From positions 141,427-205,426 of the IMG/VR virus record IMGVR_UViG_3300049846_001037: 64,000 bases of DNA; one strand, written 5' to 3'. Positions 10,032 to 64,000 of this stretch are shown piece after piece. The notes beneath the pieces are model-generated. The model was not told the origin of the DNA, made no database searches, and saw only the letters and a program-made list of their open reading frames with translations. A program made the translations under genes and the position numbers. Each line of letters begins with the position of its first letter. The first letter of the stretch is position 1.

Positions 10032-11327
10032 TTATCTCTCCCTTCTCTTCATACCTGGTATTTGGATGGGATTATTTTCAACCTTCTTGGGGGCGTTTGT
10101 TTCGCCTCCCGATGTGTCTATCGTAACATTAATTGACGGTGTGTTCTCAACAGGCCCATCGAGGCTAGAAACAGTCTTTCTCTCAATCTTCTTGGAACCA
10201 GGAGTGGTATTGAAAAGACCTCCAACGCCACCACTGCCAAAGTCAACATTGATACCATCATCAAGCCTATTCTGCTGGGTCTTGATCTTCTGGTATCCCT
10301 TCCTTACACTTCTCATCATCTCATCAATGTGTTCACTGGGCAAAGCAAGTCCATTGAAGAGAACGTAGACTCGCAGGAACTTCACGCTCTCGTCGTTGTA
10401 AACACCCCTAAAAAACATACCGCCGTCCAGATACGAGCTAACGTGATCAAAGACGGCGTTGATGGCCTTGGCTGAGTCAACGGTTTGAAGCGTCTTCTCT
10501 GAACCAACTATGATGACTCCGCAAGCGGAGGCTGTTTTGAGGTCGAAGCCATCCATAAAGAAATGCTTGGCTATGTTGTCGCTGACGGTCTCAGGCGTAA
10601 AGTCCTCGGCTATCTCAAAGTCTCCAATGGCGCAAACGCCACCAGTGCTTAGGAGTCTCTTTAGATCCTGCCTGTCGAGAGCAGACACATACTTGGATGG
10701 TTTCTGAGAGTATTCGTTGAACTTCCTGATGACCGAAACGATGGCGCTGTTTAGCGGTCCCCAGAAGTTTGCAGCCGTGGGAGCGAACTCATCTACGAGC
10801 TTGTTGTTGTCAACTACGATGAGTGGGCTAATGGCTGCTTGCTGGGCGTTCTGATGGATTTCCTTGAGGTTGTCTAGAGCGTTGACGAACACGAGGGTTG
10901 ATTCATTCATGAGTGGCAGCGTATAGATTGCGCCTACATTGAGACCCAATTCTGCGGCTATCTGCGAGACCACAATACCAAGTCCGCCACCTGTTCCACC
11001 ACCGCCACCAATGCAAACCAAGACCTGCTCTGTGTTCTCGTTGACCTTGCTTCGTATGAACTTTGCCACACCGTCATAAAAGTCGTCGATGGATTTTCTT
11101 ACAACGTTGGGGTCTTTACCTGCGCCGGTACCCTTTGTGATAGGCACCAAAAACTTGTTGTCTTCGCTGAGTTGCAGACCATCAAGATCCGCTTTAGCTG
11201 TGTTGATTGCTATGACGTTATTGAAGCCCTGGAATGCAAACTCCTGAGCAATGCGGCCACCAGCTTCACCAGCGCCTATGATTAGAACATTTTTGTTTAA
11301 GATAGAATCTACGTCCACTGTCACCAT
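10032..11327 (-). CDS. tubulin/FtsZ-family GTPase (TubZ/PhuZ/CetZ-like)
   Basis: IGAGEAGGRIA, AINTAKADL, GAGKDP, signature GGGGGTGGG, VVDNN, T7-like LDRQDL. Confidence 0.88.
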   Translation of the reverse strand: MVTVDVDSILNKNVLIIGAGEAGGRIAQEFAFQGFNNVIAINTAKADLDGLQLSEDNKFLVPITKGTGAGKDPNVVRKSIDDFYDGVAKFIRSKVNENTEQVLVCIGGGGGTGGGLGIVVSQIAAELGLNVGAIYTLPLMNESTLVFVNALDNLKEIHQNAQQAAISPLIVVDNNKLVDEFAPTAANFWGPLNSAIVSVIRKFNEYSQKPSKYVSALDRQDLKRLLSTGGVCAIGDFEIAEDFTPETVSDNIAKHFFMDGFDLKTASACGVIIVGSEKTLQTVDSAKAINAVFDHVSSYLDGGMFFRGVYNDESVKFLRVYVLFNGLALPSEHIDEMMRSVRKGYQKIKTQQNRLDDGINVDFGSGGVGGLFNTTPGSKKIERKTVSSLDGPVENTPSINVTIDTSGGETNAPKKVENNPIQIPGMKRRER

Positions 11328-11360: not shown

Positions 11361-12353
11361 TCAATTATTTTTGTGTTGCTTTGACTTATTTAAGCTACCC
11401 AATATTTTTCTTTCCTTAGCATTGATGGACCTTGGGAAATTGACGTTTAGCCTAAAGTAATGATCCCCTTGTTTTTTTACCCCATAACCCTTAGCGCATA
11501 CAACAGTATTGGGATTGGAGCATTCTGGGATTTCTACATCAGCCAAGCCATGTATGGTGCTTGCTTTTACTTTGCCACCCAATATGCACTGTAAGTAGTC
11601 AACATCAAGTATTGAGTAAATATCATTTCCATCTCTCTCATATTTCTCGTGGGGTTTTATCTCTATGTGAAGCAGCAGATCTCCATACTCACCCGTGCGT
11701 CCTTTGGTGTTGCCCCGTCCTGCAGCCCTGAGTATTTGTCCACTGGCAATGCCCTCAGGTATCTTGATTGACAACTCTGACTCTTTACGAACATAGATGT
11801 TTCCATGACACTTGCTGCACTTGATCTTCTTACCTTTTCCATGACAGGTATCACAGGTCTTTTGAATGGTCACAAAGCCATTGGACTGAACCTGAACGCC
11901 ACGTCCGCCACATGTCCCACACTCTTCATAGGCATAGTCGCCATGCTTCTCTTTGTGCGCCTCGCAGACATCGCAGATATCGTATTGGGCATACCTCACG
12001 TTCTTCTCGGACCCAAAGCAGGCCTCAAGAAACTCTATCTCAATGACCGCCTCAATGGTGGGATTGATGGTCTGAGTGGCTTTTTGCCTACGATAGAGTT
12101 CTTCGAATATGTCTTGCGGGGATGGGGGCCTGAATCCATGAGGGAAGCCACCAAAGTCTGGCTGCTGAGGTCTATCGGCTTCGCCATCAACTATCTTTTG
12201 GTAAGCCTCTGAGATTTCTTTGAACTTGGTCTCTGCGCCAGGATCCTTGTTGATGTCTGGGTGGTATTTCTTGGCCAACTTTCTATAAGCTGCCTTAACC
12301 TCATCTTGTGAGGCACCCTTTTTCAAGCCAAGGATTGAGTAGTAGTCCTTCAT
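11361..12353 (-). CDS. dnaJ: DnaJ chaperone
   Basis: J-domain with HPD, CxxCxGxG repeats and C-terminal domain. Confidence 0.92.
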
Positions 12354-12367
12354 ATTTTACACCCACA

Positions 12368-12406
12368 TAAAAAAGCCCAAGGCCACCTTGATGGCGACCT
12401 TGGGCT
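12368..12406 (-). terminator. intrinsic terminator after the DUF2997-like gene
   Basis: AAAAAAGCCCAAGG...CCTTGGGCT hairpin. Confidence 0.75.
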
Positions 12407-12426
12407 GTGTATCACATCATTGTTGC

Positions 12427-12636
12427 TTAGTTCTGGGTGCCACCGCCAACGATGTAAACATCGCTCGGCTGCTCGTTCTCGAAGAACTCGCCGGTCTTGG
12501 AGAACTTAGTCTCCCCCAAGGACTCCAAGAACTTATCGACCTTGGCGCACTTCGGACCCTTGATTCCATTGACTTCGGAGAAGATGTTTCCTTCCTTGTC
12601 AATGACGAACTTGATCTTCGCTGTAGTCTTTGACAC
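12427..12636 (-). CDS. DUF2997-like small protein
   Basis: IKFVIDKEGNIFSEVNGIKGPKC...LESLG...TGEFF pattern. Confidence 0.7.
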   Translation of the reverse strand: MSKTTAKIKFVIDKEGNIFSEVNGIKGPKCAKVDKFLESLGETKFSKTGEFFENEQPSDVYIVGGGTQN

Positions 12637-12669
12637 AACTAGCTCCTTTCTTTCTCGTGAGAGGTTGGT

Positions 12670-13035
12670 TTAGCCTACGAGCAAGGTCTCGTCGATCTCG
12701 CCCTCGATGACGATGCGGCCATCAGGAGTGACAGTGGCTTCGGACAATCCGGTGATGCCGTGTCCTGAGCGGCTGTTGATCTCCTTGTAAAGCTTGACCT
12801 GAGCGTACATCTGGTTGAGCTTGCTGAACAGAGCGTTGGCTCCGTAGCGCTCACCGGCCGAGAACTCGTACTTGCCATCGGCCAAGCGGGTGGCATTGAA
12901 GTTCTCAGTGCCGCTCTTGACGATGAGATCGATCTTGTTGGCGGCCTCGTTGTAGCTCCAGCCCAACTTCTCGATAGCCTGCTTGAGAGCAGACAAGTCA
13001 TTGATTACTGTTTTTACTCTAGCTGTCTGTGACAT
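12670..13035 (-). CDS. DUF1257 (Ycf35-like) protein
   Basis: MSQTARVKTVINDLSALKQAIEKLG...LNQMYA...DGRIVI; next to the DUF2997-like gene. Confidence 0.65.
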   Translation of the reverse strand: MSQTARVKTVINDLSALKQAIEKLGWSYNEAANKIDLIVKSGTENFNATRLADGKYEFSAGERYGANALFSKLNQMYAQVKLYKEINSRSGHGITGLSEATVTPDGRIVIEGEIDETLLVG

Positions 13036-13125
13036 GGTTCTTTCCTCCTTGGGGGTTTGTTCCCTTTTCTTGATTCTATTATATTACATTTTTATAGAAT
13101 ATCAAGATTTTTTTTGAGCTTTATT

Positions 13126-14391
13126 CTAAGCTGCTTTCAGTTGAGAAAACCCCTTTAGGCGGTTCTCAACGAAGTCCTTGTCTATATTATACGTCTTTTC
13201 CTTAGATCCTGGTATGGAAAACATCAAGTCATTTAAGACTTTTTCCATCACGGACCTCAATGCCCTAGCTCCTATCTTCATAGCCAAAGCATGTTCGACC
13301 ACTGCATCGAGAGCTTCTTCGGTGAAGTTCAGGGTCTTCTCGTCCATCTCAAACAGAGCCTTATATTGCTTCAAGACGGCATTCTTGGGCTCAGTGAGAA
13401 TCCTTCTTAGATCTTCTTTCTTTAGCTCGTCCAATGTGACTAGGACAGGAAGCCGACCAAGGAACTCTGGAATCAGACCATACTCAATAAGGTCTTCGTG
13501 AGTGACCATATGGAGCATTTTCTTCTTCTGTTCCTCTGCCTCTTTCTTGCTCAGGGACTCAGAACCGAACCCGATTCCAGACTTGTCCTTGTTCACCCTC
13601 GCTTCAATGGTGTCGATGATGTGTGCAAATGCGCCACCACAGATAAAGAGGATTTTGGACGTATCGATGAGAACGCTTGGTGCGCCTGGGTGCTTCCTTC
13701 CCAGGTCCACCGGAGCATTAGCCATAGTGCCTTCTAGCAGCTTCAACAAAGCCTGCTGGACACCCTCTCCCGACACGTCCCTTGACAAAGACGCCCCAGC
13801 ACCCATCTTCCTGATCTTGTCGATCTCATCAATGAAGATGATGCCAGTCTGAGCCCTTGCTATCTTCTCTTCTGGAGTCTTACCCTCTGCTTTCTGAACA
13901 AGCCTTGTCAGCATTGTCTCAACGTCATCACCGACATAGCCAGCCTGGCTAAAGGTGGTTGCATCAACGATGACGAATGGGACGCTGAAAAGATCCGCCA
14001 AATGCTTGACCATGTAGGTCTTGCCGCTACCACTGGGTCCAAGCATCAGGACGTTTGACTTGTCTATCTCCACATCCTCAAACTTCCTTGTTTGAGAATG
14101 CCTCAGCTTCTTATAGTGATTGTAGACAGCCGAGCAGAGGTATTTCTTTGCCTCTTCCTGACCTATGACGTAATTGTTCAGATGCTCCAACATTTCTGCT
14201 GGCGTATGCATCTTGATGGTGATGTTGCCTTCTGCTGCCTTTGTCTCGCCTTTGGAAAGACTGACGATGGCATGCATCTGCTCAATACAGTCATTGCAGA
14301 CTGCAATCTCACCCGAAGATGTGGAGAGGAGCTGCTTTACTTCCTCAGCTCCACGCCCACAGATAGCACACGATTTGCTTGGGGAAGCCAT
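13126..14391 (-). CDS. clpX: ClpX AAA+ unfoldase
   Basis: C4 Zn-binding domain, [16 protein letters not shown] pore loop, [25 protein letters not shown] loop, GARALRS. Confidence 0.95.
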
Positions 14392-14393
14392 TC

Positions 14394-16190
14394 TTAGTCC
14401 TTTCTGGTGTCCTTGGCGTCCACGAACACCAGTTTGTTGTCGCCCTTCTGGGCGGTGACTTCCTTACGAGCCTTCGATGAGTAACGAGCCCTGATACCGT
14501 CCTTCTTGTCCTTGTCCCAGCCGACCCAATCGTAGAGGTACTCGATGTCTTCCTCTGCGGTCTTGGAGAGTGGGATGCCCTCAGCGATAGCCCTGAAGAT
14601 GTGGGCATTCTTGAGCTTGCTCTTGTTCTCGTTCCAAGCGAAGATCAGAGCAGCCTTGATGGCTTCCTCGCACTCCGAGTTCGACCACTTATCGGTGGCG
14701 GCAGCAAAGCCCTTAACATCGAAGTCGTCTGGGTCATAACCCTTCTTGCGAAGGTGAATCGAGAAGGTCTCTTGACGCTCAGAAGCCTCAGGGAGCGAGA
14801 CGAAGAAGATCTCGTCAAAGCGACCCTTACGAGACAACTCTGGCGGTATCTGCCTGATGTTGTTGGCGGTGGCGACCACAAAGACGGGAGCCGTCTTGTC
14901 GTTCAACCACGTCAGCAAGGTGCCGACCACACGAGCGGTGGTGCCTGCATCTGACGAGTTGGACGAAGCCACACCAGCCAAGCCCTTCTCGATTTCGTCA
15001 ATCATGACCACGCAAGGCGACACGGCCTCGATGAGCTTGATGACCTCACGGACATTGGCTTCAGACGAACCCACAGTCTGGCTGAACACTTTGCCGACAT
15101 CGAAGCGAACCAGCGGCATAGCCAAGAGGTTGGCAGTAGCCTTTGCGGTGTATGACTTACCGCAACCTGGAGGGCCGACCAGCATCAGACCCTTCGGGGT
15201 ATCGATGCCGAACTTGTGGGCTTCCTCGGTGAAGACTGTCTGGCGCAGCTTGAGCCAGTTCTTCAACTCTTCCATGCCGCCCACGTCTTCCAACTTAACG
15301 TCCGACTCGTAGTATTCGAGCAAGCCGTTCTTGAGGATCATCTGCTTCTTTGACTCAAGCAAGAAGTCAGCCCTGATCTCCTCGAACTTGACCTGAGATA
15401 CGGTCACAACGTTGTCGATCTCTGGCAGAGAAAGACCCGTCAAGGACGTAAGTATCTTGCTGACCTCTTCGTGGGTGTATTCGGTTCTCCACGGAGCGCC
15501 TGCAGCCGAGACCTTGGAGGGATTCTTCTCGACAGTCGTCAAGATGGAATGCTGCGAGAGATAGTCCATGATTTCTTCCCTGGTGGGAAGATTCCAGTCG
15601 ATGACCGTGACGAGATTGCGCAGTTCAATTGGGATCTGCATGACTGGGCTGACAATGATGAGGCAGCGGCGAACCACGCTCTCTTCGTCATCATTGTGAA
15701 CCACGATGTCCTTCACCTTGCGGACAACACGAATGTCCTTGAGGTGAGGGTGGATGTCCTTGAGGACTACCACATGACAGTCGGCGTCATGCTTCTTGTT
15801 GGTGGGAACGTTGGTGGAGAAGAAGTTGAGAGCCGCCAAGGCGTCCTTGGATGCGTCATCGTCGGTCTTCTCTGGAACGACCAAGCCCTCGCTCTCCATC
15901 TTGCGATTGATGACGTTGATGTAGTGGTCTTCCTCATGCTCAAGGTTCTTCATGGCAGCATGGAGGGTACCCTTGGTGCAGGACCACTCGTAGTATCCAT
16001 AAGTCCTAGCCTGAGCCTTGTCTTTGTTCAGGTTCAGGGATGAGACGCACCTGCGGATATCCTGCATGGTGAATCGCTCATCGTTGGTGTTGATGTATAT
16101 AAGAGACGCACCGGAACGTATGTAATCAACTAGTTCCTGCGACACCATCGGCTTGCGGATATTCTTCTTTGCTTCAGCCATTGTTTTCAC
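14394..16190 (-). CDS. Ycf46-like AAA ATPase
   Basis: Degenerate N-terminal AAA ([10 protein letters not shown]), then [42 protein letters not shown]. Confidence 0.85.
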
Positions 16191-53674: not shown

Positions 53675-54040
53675 GTCTTCAGGATCCTGCAGAGCTCTGC
53701 AGCTGCAGCCTTAAGCAAGAAACCCCATCAAGCTTTCTGATGGGGTTCTCGTGGGAATCTGCTGATGTCTATTCGTTCTGGTGTGTGGCTGGGACTATAT
53801 CGTTCTTGTTTCTTGTAGAGCCTATTTGCAGGTATCCCGTATTTCCTGCCCTCGAACATTACCCTACACCAGTCTTTATCTTTCTGGGTGAACACCGCAA
53901 CAACTTCTACTTTCCTGACTGGGGGAGAGCTAAGTCTTTTGTCCCCATCTACGAAGGCATAGTCGGTGTAGGCTATGCTGGACTTCTCTGCCGAGGGTTT
54001 GTTGTGGTGGGTCAGTTTAATGAACCCCGGCACTTTGTCT

Positions 54041-54811
54041 TCATTCGTTACTGGGTTTCTCTCCAGTTTCCTGAATCTCTTGTTCGATGACATTTGCTCC
54101 CCCAGAGGCGTTGGAAAAGAGAATCTTCCTAGCCTCATTATTTTCGTTGGCTTCAATCTCAATCTCTTTCATCCCGTTGGCTTCGTGAGCATGACCAAAG
54201 AGATGGAGAAATAGATTCTTGAAGAACGGATATTCATTACGCAAGGCGCTGCCGAACAATCTGGTGTAAAGGCAGTTGTAGCCGATGTGTTGTCCGCCAT
54301 AGTTGTGGTCGAGGACTTGGCTAGGCGGGGCGTGGGTAATCAGAACATTGATGTTGGGGCCGAGCTGATGCAGGAGTTCATTGAAGTCGAACTCCTCTAG
54401 CTCCTCATGCCACTCTTTGATAAGCGGGTGGATACCGACGGCCAAGCCAACGGACAAGCCATCCACTTCAACCACACGAGCGCCCTTGAATTGGGTGATG
54501 GCGTTGGGGAAAGCTTTTGAGAAGTCGCAGAAGTCGTGGTTCCCATTGACGATGATGAGAACCCGATGCGGGATTCGGTCAAGCAGAGGCTTCAAGGCAT
54601 TGATAGCCCATTGAAGTTGGTGGGCTCCCTCAGCCTCTCTGTCTATTTTACGAAATCCGTTGGCTAAGAGAGTCATGTATTTTACATGGGTAGGCGCAAT
54701 GTCCCCACTCAAGACAATCCAATCAAAGGACTGCCCTGAGGCAATAATCTTCCACAGGATCTTTAGAATCCCATGAAGGTCGGAAAGATGAAGGATGCGA
54801 AGGGTTCTCAT
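54041..54811 (-). CDS. calcineurin-like metallophosphoesterase
   Basis: SDLHG, SGD, GNHD, THAPP and FGHAH motifs. Confidence 0.85.
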   Translation of the reverse strand: MRTLRILHLSDLHGILKILWKIIASGQSFDWIVLSGDIAPTHVKYMTLLANGFRKIDREAEGAHQLQWAINALKPLLDRIPHRVLIIVNGNHDFCDFSKAFPNAITQFKGARVVEVDGLSVGLAVGIHPLIKEWHEELEEFDFNELLHQLGPNINVLITHAPPSQVLDHNYGGQHIGYNCLYTRLFGSALRNEYPFFKNLFLHLFGHAHEANGMKEIEIEANENNEARKILFSNASGGANVIEQEIQETGEKPSNE

Positions 54812-54907
54812 AGTGGGGTCATTGTATTACATCTGGCTGGTTCGTCAAGTGGCCAATTTTACAAAAGGGGCTTGCTCGCTGGTGGTTTTGATGGCTCGCT
54901 ACCGATT

Positions 54908-54923
54908 TACTTAAATTTAAGTA
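54908..54923. repeat. intergenic palindrome copy 11
   Basis: TACTTAAATTTAAGTA. Confidence 0.9.
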
Positions 54924-55127
54924 GAGACTCGCCTGCAGCTAAGCCCGGATATACTGCAGTGCGCTTAAGAGCCCCATTGGGAAATAAGGGTTTTCAGACG
55001 CCTAGCTGCAGGGATCTGCAGATATGTGCCGCTAATCTCCTGGGCACGAGCTTAGTACGCCTGGGCACAACAAAAAAGCTCCCCAGCTTGAGGGAGCTTT
55101 CTTGTGCGGCTACGGGCTTACGCTTTC

Positions 55128-55370
55128 TTAGGCTACTACGGCTTCTGGCTTCTTAGCCGCATTTGCCTTTTTAATTTCGGCGTATTTCTTGGGTATCTTC
55201 AACCCATAACGCCTGATGGCTCGATTGATGGAGACATAGGGCCATTTATGACCGCCTTCCATCTTCTCGGTCTTCTCTCGGCATTGCTCCTTGATGGGCT
55301 TGCCAAGAGTCTCCTTAATTCTTATCATTTCCTTGATGTCATCTTCCGTGTAACATATGGGGCGAGGCAT
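55128..55370 (-). CDS. small basic DNA-binding protein, apparent paralog of 50834-51034
   Basis: MPRPICYTEDDI...YVSINRAIRRYGL. Confidence 0.45.
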   Translation of the reverse strand: MPRPICYTEDDIKEMIRIKETLGKPIKEQCREKTEKMEGGHKWPYVSINRAIRRYGLKIPKKYAEIKKANAAKKPEAVVA

Positions 55371-56670
55371 TGCTAAACCTCCAACAAGTTGGGATACAGT
55401 CTTACCTTATTATACTTTTAGTGGGACGAAAGCACAAGTTTTTTTGTGGAAGAATGACGGACGCCCTCTACATTGTCAAAGGCACCCCATAGTTTTCCAT
55501 AACCGGCTTTTTCGGGGAGGCGTTTCAATACACGCAACAGAACATGACCTTTGCCAGACACAGAACGATTACCGTCCGTAATTGAGAACTTGTCTTTCCC
55601 CAACGAAAGTATCATCACGCTGGTCTTGTTTATCCAAAGCCTCTCGAACTCCAGTAGGAGCTTGGCTTCGTATTGGCTTGGCTTGAAATATGCGGGCATC
55701 TCTTCTCCTGAGTATCAGTAACTCATTATACTCAGGAAAAGAGATCCTTTCAAAAAAATCTTATCGAACCCGCAGTTTCTTGCCGCTCTTCCCACGTCGG
55801 ATGAGGCTCATGACATCCTCCTTCGGTTGATATCACTTCTTAGAAGAAGCCGTTGTACTTCACAGCTTCCCTGATGCTGTTGACGATCCGTGCCTTCGCA
55901 GCCCTGTCGAAGTTCTCCATCACGTTGTTCATGATGCCACTGGAGGTGACGGCTCGGCTGCTCTCGTTCAGGACGTTCTCCGTGAGGTGTTTCAGGAACC
56001 GCTCCAGCTTCTCTGACTCAGGAACCTTCTTGTTCTCCTGCAGAGCCTTGGCCATGTCGATGTAGAGCCCCAGCCACTTGTGGTAAGCAGCGTGGTCGCA
56101 GGCATTGGAGCCCCACGTCAGGAACTTATGCATGTCCTCAGCAGCCTTCTCCTTGTAGGACGCCATCAAGGCGGACATGCCCTGATGTTCCGTCCACATC
56201 CAGTTGATGCAGGCTTGCAGGTTGAGCTTGGACTTCTTCTTCACTGTAGCCATGACATCTCCTACTTAGAGCGAATGGGCTTGGCTTGAGGACGCCCCTT
56301 CTTCTTGCAGTTCGGGCAGGGCTTCTTGCGTTTGTCGTTGGCTTTCTCCAACTTCCTCAGTTCAGCCTGAGGTGTAGTTCGGGAGAACTCAGCCTTCCCC
56401 GTCTTGGGGTTGAATTCGATCTTGATCATTGGATGTACTCCTCAGCAGCGTCCATCGCCATCTGGGCTTTGCCTTGACCATGAGCAGCATAGCGGGTCTC
56501 CTCGACCAACCAACGCTTGGTGCCCATCTTACCAGGCAGCGGAATCTTCACCGTGAGGACTCCCACCCCATTGTAGGTCATCACTTGGAACTTGATGCCG
56601 CTCTTATGCTCGGCCGTGAAGTCCGTCTCTGGGCGATGGACATCAGGCACCCACTTCAGTTTGGGTCGCT

Positions 56671-56958
56671 TCATTGCTCCACCTCTTTGGTCAGAGATTG
56701 GCAGAGTTGGTAGTAGCTGCCATTGCCTAAAGCTGTGGGACTGCCATAGAGCTTCCAGCCATCCTGGAGCATTTGGTTGACTCGCCTGCTCAGGTCATCC
56801 TCGCTGCTATCGCAGACCATCGAGTAGACCGTCACCTTCTTCGGCACCTTCTGCTCCTTCGCCCCAGACAACTGGAAGGGGACGAAGACCGCCAAGAAGA
56901 CGAGACACATCAGCGATGCCCAACCTTGTGGCGTGAGACGCTTGAAGAACTTCTTCAT
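56671..56958 (-). CDS. membrane-anchored DUF1737-like protein
   Basis: TM segment followed by LSRRVNQMLQDGWKLYGSP...LCQSLTK. Confidence 0.55.
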   Translation of the reverse strand: MKKFFKRLTPQGWASLMCLVFLAVFVPFQLSGAKEQKVPKKVTVYSMVCDSSEDDLSRRVNQMLQDGWKLYGSPTALGNGSYYQLCQSLTKEVEQ

Positions 56959-56968
56959 GGCTGGCTCC

Positions 56969-57505
56969 TCAGATGAACTTCACCTTGATGGCGACGATGT
57001 TGCCCTTGGCGTCTTCACGGGTGTAGGCGGTGTAGGAGCCATCGCCGTAACCGCTGCTCGACACGGCTCCGTGAGGCATGACGCCACCGTGGTTCTCGTG
57101 GTTGGGGTCTTCCTCGTTGCCGCAGGTGAGGGAGCAGGCGGCAGCGTAGAAGGGAGCCCCGCCATCCTTGTCCTTGTCCTTCGCCATCTTCTCCCATTGC
57201 TTGGTGATCTTGCCCACCGACTCCGAAGCCTTGCGGTAGAACTTGTCATCGAAGATGGACATCTGACCGCTGTCCACGCCGCAGTCGATGTTGAGGGCGA
57301 TCCACTTGTCGGCAGGCTTCGCCTTGGCGTGGGTCACGACCAGGCTGGCGACACGTCCCTCACGGTTGAGGTTGGCGGTAGCCTTCCACTCGCCCTTGAG
57401 GACGCCGCTGACGGTACCGGCGCAGATGGTGCCCTTCTCGTAGCAAGGGTCGGAGATGCGGACTTTGCCGGTCTCGATGGTGAAGGTTCCGATGGACTTC
57501 TTCAT
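56969..57505 (-). CDS. DUF4241-like protein
   Basis: GKVRISDPCY, GVDSGQMSIFD and SSGYGDGSY motifs. Confidence 0.55.
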   Translation of the reverse strand: MKKSIGTFTIETGKVRISDPCYEKGTICAGTVSGVLKGEWKATANLNREGRVASLVVTHAKAKPADKWIALNIDCGVDSGQMSIFDDKFYRKASESVGKITKQWEKMAKDKDKDGGAPFYAAACSLTCGNEEDPNHENHGGVMPHGAVSSSGYGDGSYTAYTREDAKGNIVAIKVKFI

Positions 57506-59044
57506 GGTCTACTCCTGAGAAAAGTCGATGCTGATGTTCTTGATGTTGCGGAACGCCTTCCACAAGGCATTCTCCTGCTTCTCGACCATCTCACGGGAGC
57601 CACGCAGAGTCAACCCCAGATTGATGTCGTAGGTGCGGTTCTTCGTCTGCTGGAAGTTGAAGCCCCCACCCGTGACCCTGAACTTCTTGGGGAACCCCTT
57701 GGGCAGACGGCTGTTGACCCGCTCACGAGCCTTCTGCTCGAAGGTCTCGTCATCGAAACGCTGTTCGAAAGGGATCTTGATGGTGACATCCACGATGGTC
57801 TTCATGGCTTACTCTCCCTCAGGATGCAGGAACTCTTGGATGTCGTCCGCCTTCCAGTCGCCCTGCTTCTTAGCCCTGATGCGGAATGCCTTCTCGTTGA
57901 GACGTTGGTTGCTGACGGGCATGGAGACCCCAGTCAGGGAAGTCCTCTCAGCGAAGCCCTCGTTCATCTCCGCCACAGCATCATCCAGCGTGATGGTCTT
58001 GGGTATGGGCTTGGTGGAGAGGATTTCCACCTGAACGACGGTCCTGTAGAAAGCCATGTCAGACTCCGGAGAAGGGCTTGCAACGGGTGACTCTGGTCAG
58101 TTTTCTGCCACCAGTCAACTCGGTGATGAGTTCGACTTCACCCTCTAAGGAGTGAGTGGAACCGAACTGAGGAACTGAGGCGTGGGACTTCAAGGAGCGA
58201 GTCCACACGAAGATGTTGCCTTCACGGTCTTCGAACATGAGGGTGTAGTTGTGGGCATTCACAGCCCCTCGTGTCTCCTTGACGTAGACCACCTTACCCG
58301 TGAAGATTGCCTTCATGGCTACACCAGAGAGCAGGCAACACGGTGGGCGGCCAGCAAGTCGGCAGCACCCTCATCGCCATCACCGTTGGTGTAATCGTAC
58401 TTCTTCTCCAGGTTCTTGGACCATTGGCGGTAGAACGCCATGTCGGGCAGGTCATCGTGTCCCGTGAAGCAGGTCTCGTCGTCATCAGCGCCAGGGCAGG
58501 TCGAGAGCAGTTCCACCTCAGGCTTTTCCTCCTGCCCCAGCTCCCAGCCCATCTGCTTGAGCAAACGGACCATCTCGTTGGCGACCACGGTCTCGTTCTT
58601 GCTGAGTTTGTAGATGACCTGCATGGCTTCCTCCTGCTCTTGAGTTGACTCCATACTAACTTAAAGAGTACTACTTGTCAAGCCACCACGGTCAGCCCCC
58701 GCTTCATCTGCTTCTCCCACTCATCCGAATAGGCTTTGGGACGCAACAGGTTCTTTTGCTTGGGATGACCATTGCGATAAGCCCAACGGCAGACATTCTC
58801 AGCATAGTTGCGACCATTACGCCTGACACCCATCTTCCCCAGAAACTTCTCCTCAGCATGTCGAGGGTTCTTGGCTCGTAGGGGCTTATGAGTCCAACAG
58901 CACATGTCGCTGTGGATGATGGCGAAGACATAGTAACGGGGCATGGGGTTCTCCAAGTGATGTCTTAGTATAACTTCCCAGCAGCCACTCGTCAACCGTC
59001 GGCCGCAGCCAACTGCCGTCGTTGGGATCTGGGAGCCCCTTGTC

Positions 59045-59060
59045 TACTTAAATTTAAGTA
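59045..59060. repeat. intergenic palindrome copy 12
   Basis: TACTTAAATTTAAGTA. Confidence 0.9.
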
Positions 59061-59462
59061 AGCGCCGATGTCCGGTCGTTGGGCGATGAGCTCTACCCAG
59101 AAAACAGAAAAGCCCCACCCTTTCGGATGAGGCTCTTCTGTGCACCCGGCGTACCACCCTATGCTGATCCATGGGTCATAGGGAACCCGTCTTACACTTA
59201 ATACCGATGCTTGATGGCGGCGAATTGGGCGAAGGTGAGGGTAGGCTTGATGCCCTTCAACTGGCAGTAAGCCTTCCACAACTCTCTGTCGCAGGTGTAT
59301 TCGCCAGGAGTCGGCTCACACTCGATGTTGTCGATGAACTGAGCCGCTGTGTGGGAGTCGATGTCCTCCACACGCTCGAAGCCCCAGATGTCTTTGAGGT
59401 AATTGCGGCTCTCCCTCGAAAGGGGAAAAGCCGTCTTGAGGGTGGCGGACATCTTTGACTCC

Positions 59463-59561
59463 TTAGTGGTTGAAGTGCTGTACCACCGCTGCCCCGATGA
59501 CGAACAGGATGGCGATGACGATGACCAGTTCGACCAAGGTGAAGCCTCGTTGGTTACGCAT
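59463..59561 (-). CDS. 32-aa mini type IV prepilin (class III signal peptide plus hydrophobic helix only)
   Basis: MRNQRG/FTLVELVIVIAILFVIGAAVVQHFNH*; GAGG RBS; below the length cutoff of the ORF track. Confidence 0.8.
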   Translation of the reverse strand: MRNQRGFTLVELVIVIAILFVIGAAVVQHFNH

Positions 59562-60950
59562 GACTACCTCGAAGGGGAACGATGGACTTGCTGACGCCAG
59601 ATGTGGGCGGTGATGGTTCGGTCAGCCTCCATCTTCTTGTCCAGAAGCTTGTTGTACTTCCTCCGTCCATAGGCTTGGGCGGCGATGAGCTTGCGGCAGA
59701 GAGCAGCCAGCCTCTTGACATTGCGAGGCGTAGGGTTCTTGAGAGCCGCTTGGATGACTGCCTCTTGCTGCGTCATGTCCGACTCCTACTAGATGAGCTT
59801 CTTGCGGCGGAGTTTGGTCCGCAGGTTCTTGAGAGCCTTGATCTGGTTGCGGAGCTGAACGCCCTCCAGGCTGTGACCCAGATCGTGGATGCTGACGTTC
59901 TGGAGGTAGGTCTTGTACTTCTTCTCCAAGACCTTGATCTCTTCGTTGATGACATCGCTCACACGGAGTCCCATGACTTACCTCAAGAGGGATTGGAGTT
60001 GCGTCATTTCCTCGGTCAGAGTTTCATGGCGGCGTTTGGGACTGTTCCAAGAATCAAGATAGTCCCTGTCCACCAGAGCCGCAGCAGCATCCTTGACGGC
60101 TCGTTGGATATGCTTCTGAGGAACCTCAACCTTCATCTTGAGAAGGTCCAAGACCACACCAACCAAGACAGTTGGATTGTAGTCGTTTGCCTTGATCTTG
60201 TCAAGCGCCCTGCTCAGGTTGTTCTCAGTCAGAGATGCCCTGTTGCGACGGAAGTAGTCCATCTCGTCTTGGACATCATCGCAGGCAGTGCTCTGTTCGC
60301 CCCAGGCTCCCATGACTTACCTCAGATGCTTCGGTTGGCGGTTGACCCACTTCTGCCATTGAGCGAAGGTCATGTCCGCAGGCAGGTTGTGGAAGGCGAG
60401 GTACTTCTCGGTGATGCTGTGGTCATCGGGCCAGACTTCCTTGGGCTCCTCTTCACGGTTCTCGATGAAGAGCGCCACCCAGCCCAGAGGCAACTGGCTG
60501 ATGTCCTTGATGCCCTTGGGCTCCCCATCGTACATCTGCTTGATGTACTTGATCTCCGATGGGGTCAGCGTGGTCGTCACCTTGTTGCGAGAGTGGAGCT
60601 GCTTCTTGAAGGCTTCGATCTGAGCCTTCTTCTTCTTGGCGTCTTTCCGCAGATGCTTGACGGTCTTCCGCAGCTCGTCCATGATCTGACCAGCGAGGTC
60701 ATCGTCGGGCTTGGCAATGTGGACAGCGTGGTTTTGGTGAGGCATGGCGTTCCTCCTTGATGTTGAACCCATCATAAACCAAACGCCTTAACTTGTCAAT
60801 AGTAGCCCTTCAGCCTAATGAGAGACCAGCGAAGTTTATATAGATTGGTGAGGGCTTCATCAATGGTCTTGATGAACACAGGGCATCCAGCAGTCCTCTT
60901 GAGTCTCTGCATCTTCGTTATCTCTTTGCTGACGATTTCTCCATTGGCTG

Positions 60951-61571
60951 TCATTTGACCTCCAATGCCCTGACCTTCTTTGCGATGACTTTATGCATCC
61001 CAGGGTTGATGAGCAGAGCCTCTGGAACAATGCCATGTCGAACCCTATTACGAGCATGACCCATATCCTCGTTGGTCATGTCCTCAGTCCAAGGAACATG
61101 CTTGTTCTCGGCATAGATGATCAGGTCAGATTTTGTGGTAAGGAGGAAAGGACGGACGACATTCTTATTGCGGTAGGGGATGAGTTTGGGAACCCCATGA
61201 CAGGCACCCATCAGCCATGTCTCAATCTGGTCATCGAGATGATGGGCGGTGATGACTGGGACTTCAAGGCTATGGAAAAACTTGTAGCGTTCATCTCGCC
61301 AGTATTCTTCCCAAGACTTGCTCTTAGGCTTGTCCGAAGAAATCCTCTGAGCAATCATCCCAGTCAGTCCCATCTGGGTGAGGAAGTCCAGAGCCTTGGC
61401 GGAAGTCTCAGTGCCGTGGTCAAAGAAGACAGGGGCAATACGCCGCTTGCCATTGACCCCATGCTTGAGGAAGTGATAGACGGCCATGGAGTCTACGCCA
61501 CCAGAGACGGCAACGTAATGCAACTGGTCATATTGAGGAAGGCTTCCGAGAATCTTTAGCATAGCGCCCAC
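60951..61571 (-). CDS. tilS: tRNA(Ile)-lysidine synthase, catalytic domain only
   Basis: PP-loop AVSGGVDS, RDERY, TAHHLDDQIET, RPFL, EDMTN, RNRVRH. Confidence 0.85.
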   Translation of the reverse strand: MGAMLKILGSLPQYDQLHYVAVSGGVDSMAVYHFLKHGVNGKRRIAPVFFDHGTETSAKALDFLTQMGLTGMIAQRISSDKPKSKSWEEYWRDERYKFFHSLEVPVITAHHLDDQIETWLMGACHGVPKLIPYRNKNVVRPFLLTTKSDLIIYAENKHVPWTEDMTNEDMGHARNRVRHGIVPEALLINPGMHKVIAKKVRALEVK

Positions 61572-62000
61572 ACCGTCCTGTCTGCCCGCATCTCCACCAA
61601 CCTAGCCCTCTCAGCCTTCTCGTTGGTGTCAGCGAAGTAGAAGTGGTCAGCCTTGTAAGGGTTGTACTTCACCTGCCGCAGTTTGGCTTCGGAGCTCAAC
61701 ACTACACCAAACTCAGGTATCTTGCCAATGACGAAGGCGTGGACATTCTTACGCTTCTGCTCAAGGACTCGCTTATGCCCACCCGGACGAACACGGAATT
61801 CCACATTCGTCACAACCACAGACTTCTCATGCCCCACAACCTTGCCCCCAACCATCAGAGACCAGATGGACTTATGCAGGTTGTAGTAGATGTAGGTCTT
61901 CATGTCGTCCTCCTTGAGATGGGTTAATATAACTTAAGGAGAAAGACATGTCAAACTCCTATCTGCGATCCTGCAGGGACATGGCACCACCTCCTTTCTC

Positions 62001-62016
62001 TACTTAAATTTAAGTA
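62001..62016. repeat. intergenic palindrome copy 13
   Basis: TACTTAAATTTAAGTA. Confidence 0.9.
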
Positions 62017-62098
62017 ACCGACTTCCTCCTCCCGTGTTAGCACCGACGACAGCCCAAAACAAAAAACCCCCAGTCGTTAGACTGAGGGCTTTTTGTAG

Positions 62099-62362
62099 TT
62101 TGCTGTGGGAACACCGGATTTCTACCGGACTGGTCAGACACCTCTTTTCATAATCCACTTAGTCAGGGCGGGTATCCAGTTCTCGACTAAGTGGTGTAAC
62201 ATATTTCAATCTATAATATAAATAGGTTTTTCCCAACCTTGGCCCTTCTCCTATTTCCCATATGGAAATATGAGTTGGGTTAGAAAGGGGAACGCCTCGT
62301 ATTGTCGGCAGATGGTGATCAAGCCACCCACCGACTGACCTTTGGGCTAGTTCCACAGCAAA
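62099..62362 (-). ncRNA. unclassified structured RNA of about 265 nt
   Basis: Terminal stem TTTGCTGTGGAAC/GTTCCCACAGCAAA plus several internal hairpins. Own promoter (TATAAT at 62382-62387) and terminator (62061-62094). Confidence 0.6.
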
Positions 62363-62799
62363 TTGTTAAAGACCTATCCCTATTATACTGGTTCCTTAGG
62401 GATTTACAACTACTTCTGGCGGTTGATGCGGCGGGAGATTCGCCCCATCTTGTTGAGAGCCTTACGCTTCCTGTTGCGGTTGGCGTAGGTCTTCCCGTTG
62501 GTCGTCTGGTTCTTGCTCTTGGGGCGGAAGAAGTTGAACATTACTTGCTCCAGGGATTGGACAAGGCATCAGCCACCTTGTCGCAGGGAACCTCGGTATA
62601 GATGGGGCCGCTGATTCCCCTGAACCCACTCACCGCAAAGCAGAGTTGAGTCCGCTTGTCCTGAACATACTTCAGGTTGCGGGTGATGGTTCGGTCCTCT
62701 GCGGGGTTGGGGCCGAAGCCTCCATTGAACGCCACCGCAAAGAGGACCAACAGCACGATGTTGAGAACGAGCAGCACCTTGTTCATGGTAGACCCTTTC

Positions 62800-63057
62800 T
62801 TAATCGATCTGAGTGATGACCACGGTTCCGCTTACTTCCACGAGCTTCTTGGTTGCCTCATCCTCGAAGCAGTAGCCATCGGACTGGGATTGGTTGCTCA
62901 CGTTGCCGGTAGCCACCCATGAGCCAACCTTTTGACCCCCGCTATAGAGGTCCACCCGATGACGCTTCCCCAGCGAGTTCCACTGGGCCATCGTGGCATC
63001 CTTACAGCCACTCACCAACAGAGCGGCCAGAGCGATGAACAACAGATGCTTTCGCAT
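62800..63057 (-). CDS. small lipoprotein
   Basis: Signal peptide with lipobox LVSGC. Confidence 0.55.
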   Translation of the reverse strand: MRKHLLFIALAALLVSGCKDATMAQWNSLGKRHRVDLYSGGQKVGSWVATGNVSNQSQSDGYCFEDEATKKLVEVSGTVVITQID

Positions 63058-63075
63058 GACTTCCCCTTTCAGAAA

Positions 63076-63170
63076 TGGTAGGGGTAGAGGGATTCGAACC
63101 CCCGACGATTTCCATCAAGCCAATCTCTCGACTGTCCGATGGCCCCAGGTACCGCTCCAGGCATACCCCT
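63076..63170 (-). ncRNA. atypical tRNA-like RNA (95 nt, CCA-ended) with no canonical anticodon loop
   Basis: Acceptor AGGGGTA/TACCCCT plus A-CCA; D arm CCT-GGAGCGGTACCT-GGG; T arm GGGGG-TTCGAAT-CCCTC; anticodon arm CCATC-GGA-CAGTC-GAGA-GATTG-GCTT-GATGG. Confidence 0.7.
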
Positions 63171-63176
63171 ATAAAA

Positions 63177-63253
63177 TGGTGGTCCCGGCAGGACTCGAAC
63201 CTGCGACCAAGCGATTATGAGTCGCCTGCTCTAACCAACTGAGCTACGGGACC
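63177..63253 (-). tRNA. tRNA-Ile2 (CAU, lysidine-modified)
   Basis: GGTCCCGTAGCTCAGTTGGTTAGAGCAGGCGACTCATAATCGCTTGGTCGCAGGTTCGAGTCCTGCCGGGACCACCA. The anticodon arm GGCGA-CTCATAA-TCGCT is ileX-type rather than Met-type. Confidence 0.9.
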
Positions 63254-63894
63254 ATTTACTTATTATACTTTAAGACGCCCGTAAACGTCAATTAGTTTTT
63301 GGTGTTTTTCAGAGGCTTGAGGCTTGCCTTGACCTTGCGGAGCTTGTTGCCCATCTCCGCCTTGCCCACCACCTCGTTGATGACACGGGTGGTCTCGATG
63401 CTCTTGGCGACCTTCTGTATTCGCTTGAGGAACTGCTTGATCCCCTGCTCACCAGCAAAGGTCTCCACAGACCCGCTGGAATGGAACATGTCGATGCGGT
63501 TGTCGCTCATCACGATGGTCGTCTGCATGGTCTTACTCCTGTTGCCCATTGTAGCCGAGATATTCGAGCTGACGCCTGATGATCTTCACCAGCGTCTCAT
63601 CGCCCTTGGCTTCGGCTTCTTTGAGTTGTTCCAGTAGGATATTCATAGTGGGGTAAGTATAATCTTTTGAGAAATGTCTGTCAATAGAAAAATGCAAAAA
63701 GCCCTCCCCAATTTCTGAGGAGGGCTTCTTGTTTAGGGCTCTTCTACTTCTTGGTCTTCTTTACCTGCTCGTAGGTAACGTGGGCGCAGGGGAAGTAGGG
63801 CGTTCCAGTTCCCTGCCAAGACTTCCCCTTGCATTTCGGGCAGGTCTTGACCTTGTGCTTGTTGGAGCCAGCAATGAAGCCCATGTCATCCTCC

Positions 63895-64000
63895 TACTTC
63901 TTAGCCATGCTCAGAGCCACCTTGAGAGCCTTCTCCTTGATGGCGGCTCCCGAACCGAACTGGGTGGCGTTGAACCGAGCCTCGTCCTTGCTCTTGAAGG
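63895..64000 (-). CDS. C-terminus of a DUF932-like protein (5' part outside window)
   Basis: ...DEARFNATQFGSGAAIKEKALKVALSMAKK*. Confidence 0.45.

What the first reader, a model, noticed from the sequence alone, without database searches (positions are those of the whole stretch)
59463..59561. Phage-encoded 32-aa mini-pilin
Seen: MRNQRG/FTLVELVIVIAILFVIGAAVVQHFNH with an RBS, inside an early operon. Established: G/FTLxE is the prepilin peptidase (PilD) cleavage and methylation motif; the hydrophobic alpha1-N helix drives type IV pilus and T2SS pseudopilus assembly; many phages use pili as receptors. Inference: a headless pilin that poisons pilus assembly or titrates PilD, giving superinfection exclusion or blocking competence and motility. 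This would differ from known inhibitors that target the PilB ATPase.
Basis: partly seen in the sequence, partly recalled or inferred. Interest (0 to 1): 0.75.

Follow-up and report, generated by a model that had tools for sequence, protein, structure and literature searches.

The report
Headless mini-pilin gene in a jumbo phage
A large uncultured freshwater phage carries a real, conserved 32-codon gene that encodes only the membrane-helix start of a bacterial pilus subunit. Similar tiny genes sit unstudied in cultured Aeromonas phages, so the idea that phages use them to tamper with host pili is plausible and testable, but unproven and not entirely new.

Summary
The ORF is real: window 59463-59561, minus strand, 32 aa, with a GAGG RBS. 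It scores 40.1 bits against Pfam N_methyl (cut-off 21.2). It lies in a tight string of small same-strand genes in a 205-kb virus record from freshwater sediment.

It is not a one-off truncation. Three related phages carry 35-, 37- and 48-aa versions at the same place, and a fourth contig has a 36-aa version. The leader Gly, Phe+1 and Glu+5 are invariant in all five, and none has a pilin head domain.

The phage has no prepilin peptidase, pilus ATPase, platform protein or secretin, so any processing must use host enzymes.

Independent mini-pilins of 27-31 aa exist at the nrdB-nrdD locus of cultured T4-like Aeromonas phages. Those are under clear purifying selection, and GenBank notes flagged two of them in 2003 and 2010. 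Sztanko et al. 2026 noted a ~60-aa truncated PilA family in Pseudomonas phages and proposed the same hypothesis.

The most likely function is a host-processed, helix-only pilin mimic that disturbs host type IV pili or type II secretion from within the inner membrane. A pilin-pool signalling mimic is a serious rival. The function is untested and the host is unknown.

The parts
59463..59561 (-). Mini-pilin ORF, 32 codons plus TAA stop
   Evidence: Pfam N_methyl 40.1 bits
59544..59561 (-). Leader MRNQRG: class III signal peptide, net charge +2, ending in Gly(-1). The predicted prepilin-peptidase cut lies between 59544 and 59543.
   Evidence: Sequence; N3, Q4 and G6 invariant in 5 family members; the cut itself is inferred
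59466..59543 (-). Predicted mature peptide of 26 aa: F+1, E+5, a 21-residue hydrophobic helix, then QHFNH. Corresponds to the pilin alpha1-N transmembrane segment only.
   Evidence: (GRAVY 1.94)
59567..59570 (-). GAGG ribosome-binding site, 5 nt upstream of the ATG
   Evidence: the same GGAGGTAGTC-ATG context occurs in L003 and L218
59198..59452 (-). Downstream 84-aa partner gene (RBS AAGGAG at 59459-59464). No signal peptide or TM segment. Invariant DNIECEPTPGEYxCDRELWxAYC core. Stays next to the mini-pilin in 4 phages.
   Evidence: no family or fold match
59564..59776 (-). Upstream 70-aa gene of unknown function. Its stop directly abuts the mini-pilin RBS.
59789..60313 (-). Two further small genes of the same string (61 aa and 111 aa)
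60317..60775 (-). First gene of the string (152-aa ORF; JGI aa starting at 60745)
60771..60799 (-). Sigma-70-type promoter-like site TTGACA-17-TATGAT (11 of 12 matches), heading the gene string. No terminator-like site on this strand before 59198.
   Evidence: consensus match only

Best explanation
It is a genuine phage gene for a helix-only (alpha1-N-only) prepilin. The basic leader and hydrophobic helix insert it into the host inner membrane, N-terminus inside. The host prepilin peptidase cuts after Gly6 and probably methylates Phe+1. The resulting 26-residue peptide joins the pool of membrane-resident pilins and pseudopilins. It keeps the F1 and E5 contacts that subunits use to dock into a growing filament, but has no globular head. 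It would therefore act as a defective subunit that stalls, weakens or caps host type IV pili and/or the type II secretion pseudopilus during infection. The likely benefit is fewer functional pili on infected cells: exclusion of pilus-dependent competitors, or less loss of progeny on infected cells. Shown: the gene, the motif, its conservation, headlessness across relatives, and the absence of phage-encoded machinery. Inferred: cleavage, membrane residence, the target and the benefit.
For: The motif is highly significant. Five family members from four samples are all 32-48 aa; M1, N3, Q4, G6, F7, T8, L9, E11, L12, I14, V15 and A17 are invariant, including the three residues that define prepilin processing and assembly. 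RBS and tight gene coupling are conserved. GC and GC3 equal those of the neighbours, so it is not a fresh scrap of host DNA. Pairwise pN/pS is 0.32-0.76, with the constraint concentrated in codons 1-18. The phage lacks PilD, PilB, PilC and secretin homologues, so a pilin-type leader only makes sense against host machinery. There is independent recurrence: one 27-31-aa N_methyl ORF in each T4-like Aeromonas phage genome searched, at the nrdB-nrdD locus across three genera, with pS 0.72 against pN 0.19. A 59-aa form occurs in Pseudomonas phage G1. Phage-encoded pilins are known to enter host pili (P-FimU, PMC12952977). From my own knowledge (Strom and Lory 1991, not checked here): E5 is needed for assembly and methylation but not for cleavage, so its invariance points beyond a pure protease decoy.
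Against: There are no functional or expression data. The host is unknown, so the presence of pili, T2SS or PilD in it is assumed. The C-terminal half evolves almost neutrally (pN/pS about 0.8-0.9). Overall constraint is weaker than on the neighbours (0.21-0.36 for the partner gene). The family is small (5 sequences). Whether a 26-residue peptide can be picked up by the assembly platform is unknown. Short N_methyl frames also occur at about 2% in bacterial genomes (2 of 88), so phage enrichment is not demonstrated.
Confidence: 0.45

Rival explanations
1. Pilin-pool signalling mimic. The membrane-resident helix is read by a host sensor kinase that monitors the inner-membrane pilin inventory (PilS-PilR type or PleC type). 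The kinase wrongly senses a full pool, which shuts off pilin transcription or triggers retraction and c-di-GMP reprogramming.
For: In Caulobacter, 17 residues of the mature PilA transmembrane helix are sufficient to signal through TM1 of PleC. The synthetic peptide reduced pilus-phage phiCbK susceptibility by 77% and attachment by 71% (PMC7196804). [quoted passage not shown] The mature peptides here (24-41 aa) are exactly that segment.
Against: The Caulobacter pilin is an Flp/Tad-type pilin with a different motif. No sensor kinase can be examined because the host is unknown. A transcriptional route is slow for a virulent phage. The invariance of the cleavage site is equally well explained by the assembly model.
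Confidence: 0.2
2. Prepilin-peptidase decoy. The peptide is made in excess and titrates PilD, so host prepilins and pseudopilins stay unprocessed.
For: A perfect leader and cleavage motif. Promoter-like sites and a good RBS suggest high expression.
Against: A cleavable substrate is turned over rather than inhibitory. Invariant E5 and a long hydrophobic helix are not needed for a decoy (own knowledge). The Aeromonas versions have only a 3-residue leader.
Confidence: 0.08
3. A small membrane peptide with a job unrelated to pili. It could be a membrane anchor or regulator working with the conserved 84-aa partner, or a role in lysis timing, membrane permeability or injection immunity. The pilin-type N-terminus would serve only as an insertion device inherited from a captured pilin gene.
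For: The mini-gene and the 84/87-aa gene stay adjacent in four phages while the upstream genes change. The partner is more conserved than the peptide. The peptide's tail is free to vary.
Against: The partner is absent next to the L004 copy and next to the Aeromonas and Pseudomonas phage minis. A generic TM anchor would not need invariant G-1, F+1 and E+5. Independent phage lineages converge on the same motif.
Confidence: 0.17
4. Non-functional remnant of a captured host pilin gene that happens still to be open.
For: Near-neutral tail; variable length (32-48 aa); weak overall constraint. P0017, a 106-aa pilin from a metagenome, matches the whole 32 aa including the ...QHF[NS]H end, so a full-length ancestor type exists.
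Against: It has stayed open, with a start codon, RBS and translational coupling, in five diverged phages whose synonymous divergence is 0.3-0.6. Its composition matches the phage. The Aeromonas phage analogues show saturated synonymous change with the peptide preserved.
Confidence: 0.07

Closest known systems
Mini-ORFs of T4-like Aeromonas phages (Aeh1ORF040c, 28 aa; PX29p038, 31 aa; unannotated copies in phiAS5, phiWae14, avDM12-TAAL, AsFcp_2 and Ah1)
   Same: Large, apparently virulent phages. 27-31-aa ORFs consisting of a very short leader, G/FTLIEL and one hydrophobic helix. Own RBS and tight packing. One copy per genome. No head domain.
   Different: An independent lineage: similarity is confined to the motif. 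They have a 3-5-residue leader, the classical G14 and P21/22, a different locus (nrdB-nrdD) and no 84-aa partner. They are known only from GenBank notes; I found no study of them.
Truncated P-PilA (~60 aa) of virulent Pseudomonas phages (Sztanko et al., Cell Rep 2026, PMC12952977). Probably the family of vB_PaeM_G1 orf026, 59 aa; that link is my inference, as the paper's table was not available.
   Same: A phage-encoded pilin N-terminus without a head, in non-temperate phages. The authors proposed the same two ideas: incorporation without phage-binding sites, or inhibition of assembly.
   Different: About twice as long, with a ~30-residue hydrophilic tail. Also untested experimentally.
P-FimU prophage minor-pilin mimics (F10-like Pseudomonas phages)
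   Same: A phage-encoded type IV pilin-class protein that uses the host machinery and alters phage susceptibility.
   Different: P-FimU is a full-length, functional minor pilin. It replaces FimU at the pilus tip without impairing pilus function. It is prophage-expressed. The window's peptide has no head and cannot replace a subunit's surface.
CIP peptide: the 17-residue transmembrane part of Caulobacter PilA
   Same: A helix-only pilin fragment that is biologically active by itself and lowers pilus-phage susceptibility.
   Different: An experimental fragment of a host Flp-type pilin, not a natural gene. It acts by signalling through PleC, not by assembly.
Phage inhibitors of the pilus motor (Tip, Aqs1, Zip, PlzR)
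   Same: Phage proteins that reduce type IV piliation for superinfection exclusion (reviews and papers listed).
   Different: They are soluble cytoplasmic proteins acting on PilB or PilZ, with no pilin motif. No relation to them was tested here.

Membership tests
Type IV pilin / pseudopilin superfamily (class III signal peptide; Pfam PF07963, TIGR02532) | Score above the curated cut-off of the N-terminal methylation-motif models | tested here: met
   PF07963 40.1 bits against 21.2; TIGR02532 25.6 against 16.3
Type IV pilin / pseudopilin superfamily (class III signal peptide; Pfam PF07963, TIGR02532) | Short basic leader ending in Gly(-1), Phe(+1), Glu(+5), then a ~20-residue hydrophobic helix | tested here: met
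   MRNQRG / FTLVE...; invariant in 5 relatives; mature GRAVY 1.94
Type IV pilin / pseudopilin superfamily (class III signal peptide; Pfam PF07963, TIGR02532) | C-terminal globular head (alpha1-C packed on a beta-sheet) | tested here: not met
   Only 5 residues follow the hydrophobic helix. Relatives are 35-48 aa. All full-length NCBIfam pilin models score far below their cut-offs.
Type IV pilin / pseudopilin superfamily (class III signal peptide; Pfam PF07963, TIGR02532) | Cleavage and N-methylation by a prepilin peptidase | not testable with these tools
   Needs expression in a PilD-positive host and mass spectrometry
Type IV pilin / pseudopilin superfamily (class III signal peptide; Pfam PF07963, TIGR02532) | Polymerisation into a filament by an ATPase-platform machine encoded with it | tested here: not met
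   The phage genome has no Peptidase_A24, T2SSE, T2SSF or Secretin match. Polymerisation by host machinery was not testable.
Phage-encoded pilin mimics (P-FimU / P-PilA, Sztanko et al. 2026) | Encoded in a phage genome and carrying a prepilin N-terminus | tested here: met
Phage-encoded pilin mimics (P-FimU / P-PilA, Sztanko et al. 2026) | Full pilin fold able to replace the host subunit in a working pilus | tested here: not met
   No head domain
Phage-encoded pilin mimics (P-FimU / P-PilA, Sztanko et al. 2026) | Blocks adsorption of pilus-dependent phages | not testable with these tools
   Bench assay required
Truncated P-PilA of Pseudomonas phages (~60 aa) | Sequence kinship beyond the shared motif | tested here: inconclusive
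   tblastn gives 44-48% identity over 27 residues, E 0.3-0.8, motif region only. Tails are unrelated.
Flp/Tad (type IVc) pilins | G/XXXXEY processing motif | tested here: not met
   The motif is G/FTLVEL, i.e. type IVa/T2SS-like
Split pilin of the Geobacter PilA-N / PilA-C type (own knowledge) | An adjacent gene for an exported C-terminal head domain | tested here: not met
   The 84-aa neighbour has no signal peptide or TM segment and no pilin-like fold or family. It is absent beside the L004 copy and the Aeromonas phage copies.

The most novel reading that the evidence does not exclude
Large virulent phages in several unrelated lineages encode helix-only pilin peptides that act as forged 'pilin inventory' signals. 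They would hijack host membrane sensor kinases (PilS- or PleC-like) to switch off pili and rewire surface-sensing and c-di-GMP programmes within minutes of infection. That would be a natural counterpart of the synthetic CIP peptide, and a new class of phage host-takeover micro-protein.
Probability: 0.2. Interest if true: 0.85.

Novelty: new variant of a known kind. Interest (0 to 1): 0.6.

Why it matters
If these peptides act on host pili or type II secretion, they would be the smallest known natural modulators of type IV filament systems, at about 25 residues. They would also work from inside the pilin pool rather than on the motor ATPase. That would add a phage strategy for receptor control. 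It would give a natural template for peptide inhibitors of pili, which matter for adhesion, motility, competence and secretion. It would also show what the alpha1-N helix can do on its own. Because near-equivalents exist in cultured Aeromonas phages with tractable hosts, the question can be tested directly rather than only in a metagenomic phage. The finding also shows that genuine 27-35-codon genes are being left unannotated in published phage genomes.

Tried and rejected
- The query was too short for the search for related loci and the search for homologous proteins.
- Flanking genes found no IMG/VR relatives, and no INPHARED phage is similar at the DNA level.
- Searches used a mistyped DNA pattern (15 Ns instead of 13) and are void. 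The corrected family pattern (verified locally) found nothing more in metagenome contigs or viral contigs.
- A leader-based pattern found only an unrelated 121-aa phage pilin.
- tblastn with the 27-aa Aeromonas peptide returned nothing, not even itself, presumably because of low-complexity masking. It was replaced by a DNA search.
- Read laying on four other runs showed only a pile-up of unrelated GC-rich community pilin genes on the conserved motif, plus a few short phage pieces. This added no new alleles.
- No RNA run was listed.
- Host inference failed. ClpX is 41-50% identical to many phyla. The tubulin-like protein matches only Bacillus phage G at 24%. The SNF2 helicase is uninformative. 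The QHFxH pilin signature is absent from 185k species genomes.
- The partner protein has no Pfam or PHROG family and no Atlas lead. Its AF2 model is of moderate confidence (pLDDT 68) and has no fold match in PDB or BFVD.
- Considered and rejected: a split pilin of the Geobacter type; a read-through fusion with the downstream gene (the frame relation is not conserved: 13 nt in the window and L003, 12 nt in L004); an Flp-type pilin.
- Phage enrichment of short forms over bacteria could not be shown (about 5% against about 2% in small samples).
- Kilmury and Burrows 2016 and the supplement of Sztanko et al. were not available.

Full report
**1. Observation**

- A GAGG ribosome-binding site (59567-59570) sits 5 nt before the ATG and directly abuts the TAG stop of the upstream 70-aa gene.
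- The ORF's own TAA overlaps the AAGGAG site of the next gene, which starts 10 nt later.
- JGI's pipeline called the gene independently.
- It scores 40.1 bits (E = 2.2e-10) on Pfam N_methyl, whose cut-off is 21.2, and passes TIGR02532.
- With 2,499 six-frame ORFs of 25 aa or more in the genome, the corrected expectation is about 5e-7.
- It is the only such motif in the genome.

**2. Context**

The window is the last 64 kb of a 205,426-bp IMG/VR virus record, linear and about 90% complete. It came from a freshwater-sediment metagenome.
- The phage encodes a tubulin/FtsZ-family protein, ClpX, DnaJ, an AAA ATPase, a DnaB-like helicase and an SNF2 helicase.
- It has no integrase or resolvase.
- It resembles no cultured phage, and its host could not be inferred.

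The gene sits in a 10-kb block of small minus-strand genes of unknown function.
- The block is richer in GC (0.53; GC3 about 0.8) than the genome as a whole (0.47). The mini-gene's composition matches its neighbours'.
- Sigma-70-type promoter-like sites are enriched there: 13 found against 5.0 +/- 2.0, mostly on the gene strand.
- One site, at 60799-60771, precedes the string 142/152 aa - 111 - 61 - 70 - mini - 84, with no terminator-like site in between.
- 'Early operon' is therefore reasonable but unproven. No RNA run was listed.

**3. Relatives**

An exhaustive HMMER search of 1.84 billion representatives found two other tiny proteins, 35 aa (73% identity) and 36 aa (58%).
- The 35-aa one lies on a 7.2-kb contig of a distinct phage from the same sample. 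Gene order is the same, and the neighbours are 62-92% identical.
- Searching with the conserved 84-aa downstream neighbour found two more phages. Each has an N_methyl gene immediately upstream.
- In L219 that gene is 37 aa. In L218 it was called as 58 aa, but the internal ATG, which has the family's GGAGGTAGTC-ATG context, gives 48 aa.

In the five-way alignment M1, N3, Q4, G6, F7, T8, L9, E11, L12, I14, V15 and A17 are invariant. That set includes the leader Gly, Phe+1 and Glu+5.

Pairwise pN/pS is 0.32-0.76, against 0.21-0.36 for the partner gene in the same phage pairs. The constraint sits in codons 1-18, and the tail is close to neutral.

A 106-aa metagenomic pilin (P0017) matches the whole peptide, including its ...QHF[NS]H end. 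This suggests descent from a small full-length pilin. That signature is absent from 185k species genomes.

**4. The same idea elsewhere**

tblastn found prepilin-like N-termini in 68 cultured-phage records.

In Aeromonas phage phiAS5 the match fell in an unannotated gap, which holds a 27-aa ORF with its own RBS.
- The region is shared by eleven T4-like Aeromonas phage records. In the more distant ones only the mini-ORF stretch still aligns.
- Aeh1, Ah1, AsFcp_2, avDM12-TAAL, phiWae14 and PX29 each carry a 27-31-aa version at the nrdB-nrdD locus.
- There is exactly one N_methyl match in each of the four genomes searched: PX29, phiAS5, Aeh1 and AsFcp_2.
- Between phiAS5 and Aeh1, synonymous sites are saturated (pS 0.72) while pN is 0.19 and length is kept. 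That is clear protein-level selection.
- GenBank notes on Aeh1 and PX29 already say 'similar to N-terminal sequence of ... pilin'. I found no paper that follows this up.

Pseudomonas phage G1 has a 59-aa version.

A generic motif scan of IMG/VR gave 105 complete ORFs, with mature lengths from 25 to 380 aa. There is a tail of very short forms and a recurrent 64-aa family.

As a control, 88 N_methyl matches in five bacterial genomes lay in open frames of 139-494 aa, apart from two (40 and 56 aa) in one acidobacterial MAG. Short forms are therefore rare in bacteria too, and I cannot claim they are enriched in phages.

**5. What it cannot be**

It is not a pilin in the structural sense, because only five residues follow the helix. 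The phage brings no peptidase, ATPase, platform protein or secretin.

It is not a split pilin. The 84-aa neighbour has no export signal and no recognisable fold, and it is missing next to the L004 copy and the Aeromonas phage copies. Nor is it an Flp-type pilin.

**6. Mechanism**

The anatomy is a +2 leader, Gly-1, Phe+1, Glu+5 and a 21-residue helix, which is exactly the alpha1-N transmembrane segment that anchors pilins in the inner membrane before assembly.

I judge the most likely mechanism (0.45) to run as follows:
- the host peptidase processes the peptide;
- it joins the pilin pool;
- it acts as a defective subunit in type IV pili and/or the T2SS pseudopilus.

The invariance of Glu+5 fits this. 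From my own knowledge, Glu+5 is needed for assembly rather than for cleavage.

A strong rival (0.2) has direct precedent. Seventeen residues of the Caulobacter pilin helix signal through the sensor kinase PleC, and the synthetic peptide cut pilus-phage susceptibility by 77% (PMC7196804). PilS likewise reads membrane PilA.

Other rivals:
- a PilD decoy (0.08);
- an unrelated membrane role together with the conserved partner (0.17);
- a decaying remnant (0.07).

All steps after 'the gene exists and is conserved' are inference.

**7. Novelty**

Phage-encoded pilin mimicry is established for P-FimU. Sztanko et al. (PMC12952977) already noted truncated ~60-aa PilA genes in virulent Pseudomonas phages and proposed incorporation or assembly inhibition.

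This window adds a new, unrelated family at the extreme of truncation, from an uncultured jumbo phage, with a conserved partner gene.

I rate it a new variant of a known kind, of moderate-to-good interest, mainly because it is now directly testable.

Noticed in passing
L128:704-787 (phiAS5, HM452126.1 ~126211-126294); also L136:461-544, L133:437-523, L134:637-723, L135:637-723: Conserved 27-28-aa prepilin-motif ORFs with an RBS are unannotated in the GenBank records of Aeromonas phages phiAS5, phiWae14, avDM12-TAAL, AsFcp_2 and Ah1. Aeh1 and PX29 annotate theirs.
   Followed up: yes
L217:920-1015 (PX29) versus L134:637-723 (AsFcp_2): PX29 and AsFcp_2 are 99.8% identical over 6 kb elsewhere. 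At the nrdB-nrdD locus they carry different mini-pilin alleles (31 aa against 28 aa) and different neighbouring genes, so the locus is mosaic.
   Followed up: partly
window 59198-59452 (-): An 84-aa protein with an invariant DNIECEPTPGEYxCDRELWxAYC core (three Cys) stays adjacent to the mini-pilin in four phages. It has no family or fold match, and could be a functional partner.
   Followed up: partly
window 10032-11327 (-): A tubulin/FtsZ-family GTPase gene (Pfam Tubulin, E = 1.6e-13). Its only cultured-phage relative is Bacillus phage G, at 24% identity. It may be a divergent phage tubulin.
   Followed up: partly
window 11361-16190 (-): A cluster of chaperone- and unfoldase-like genes: a full-length DnaJ, ClpX with its zinc finger, and a further AAA ATPase.
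   Followed up: partly
window 54000-64000: The block of small genes has GC 0.53 and GC3 about 0.8, against 0.47 for the genome. It is enriched in near-consensus sigma-70-type promoter-like sites on the gene strand (13 against 5.0 +/- 2.0).
   Followed up: partly
window 63076-63253 (-): Two adjacent tRNA genes, Met(CAT) and Pro(CGG). The tRNA-Pro call is 95 nt long, which is unusually long.
   Followed up: no
window 60951-61903 (-): A PP-loop ATPase (PF01171) overlaps a Mycobacterium phage L5 gp82-like gene (PF25735). The PP-loop gene lies directly upstream of the mini-pilin in L218, and close to it in L219.
   Followed up: no
L025, L086, L111, L117 (IMG/VR): A recurrent 64-aa phage prepilin family (59-aa mature, with Cys residues in a short tail) occurs on four viral contigs from different samples.
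   Followed up: no
G005:C13:125181-125261 and G005:C29:30314-30391 (Pyrinomonadaceae MAG): Bacterial N_methyl matches in open frames of only 56 and 40 aa. The first lies beside a cluster of normal pilin genes. Bacteria may have their own headless pilins.
   Followed up: no
window 59505-59549: At 80% likeness, this 45-nt stretch attracts dozens of unrelated GC-rich pilin gene fragments from freshwater, wetland and sediment metagenomes. The motif is conserved even at the DNA level, which can mislead read-recruitment analyses.
   Followed up: yes
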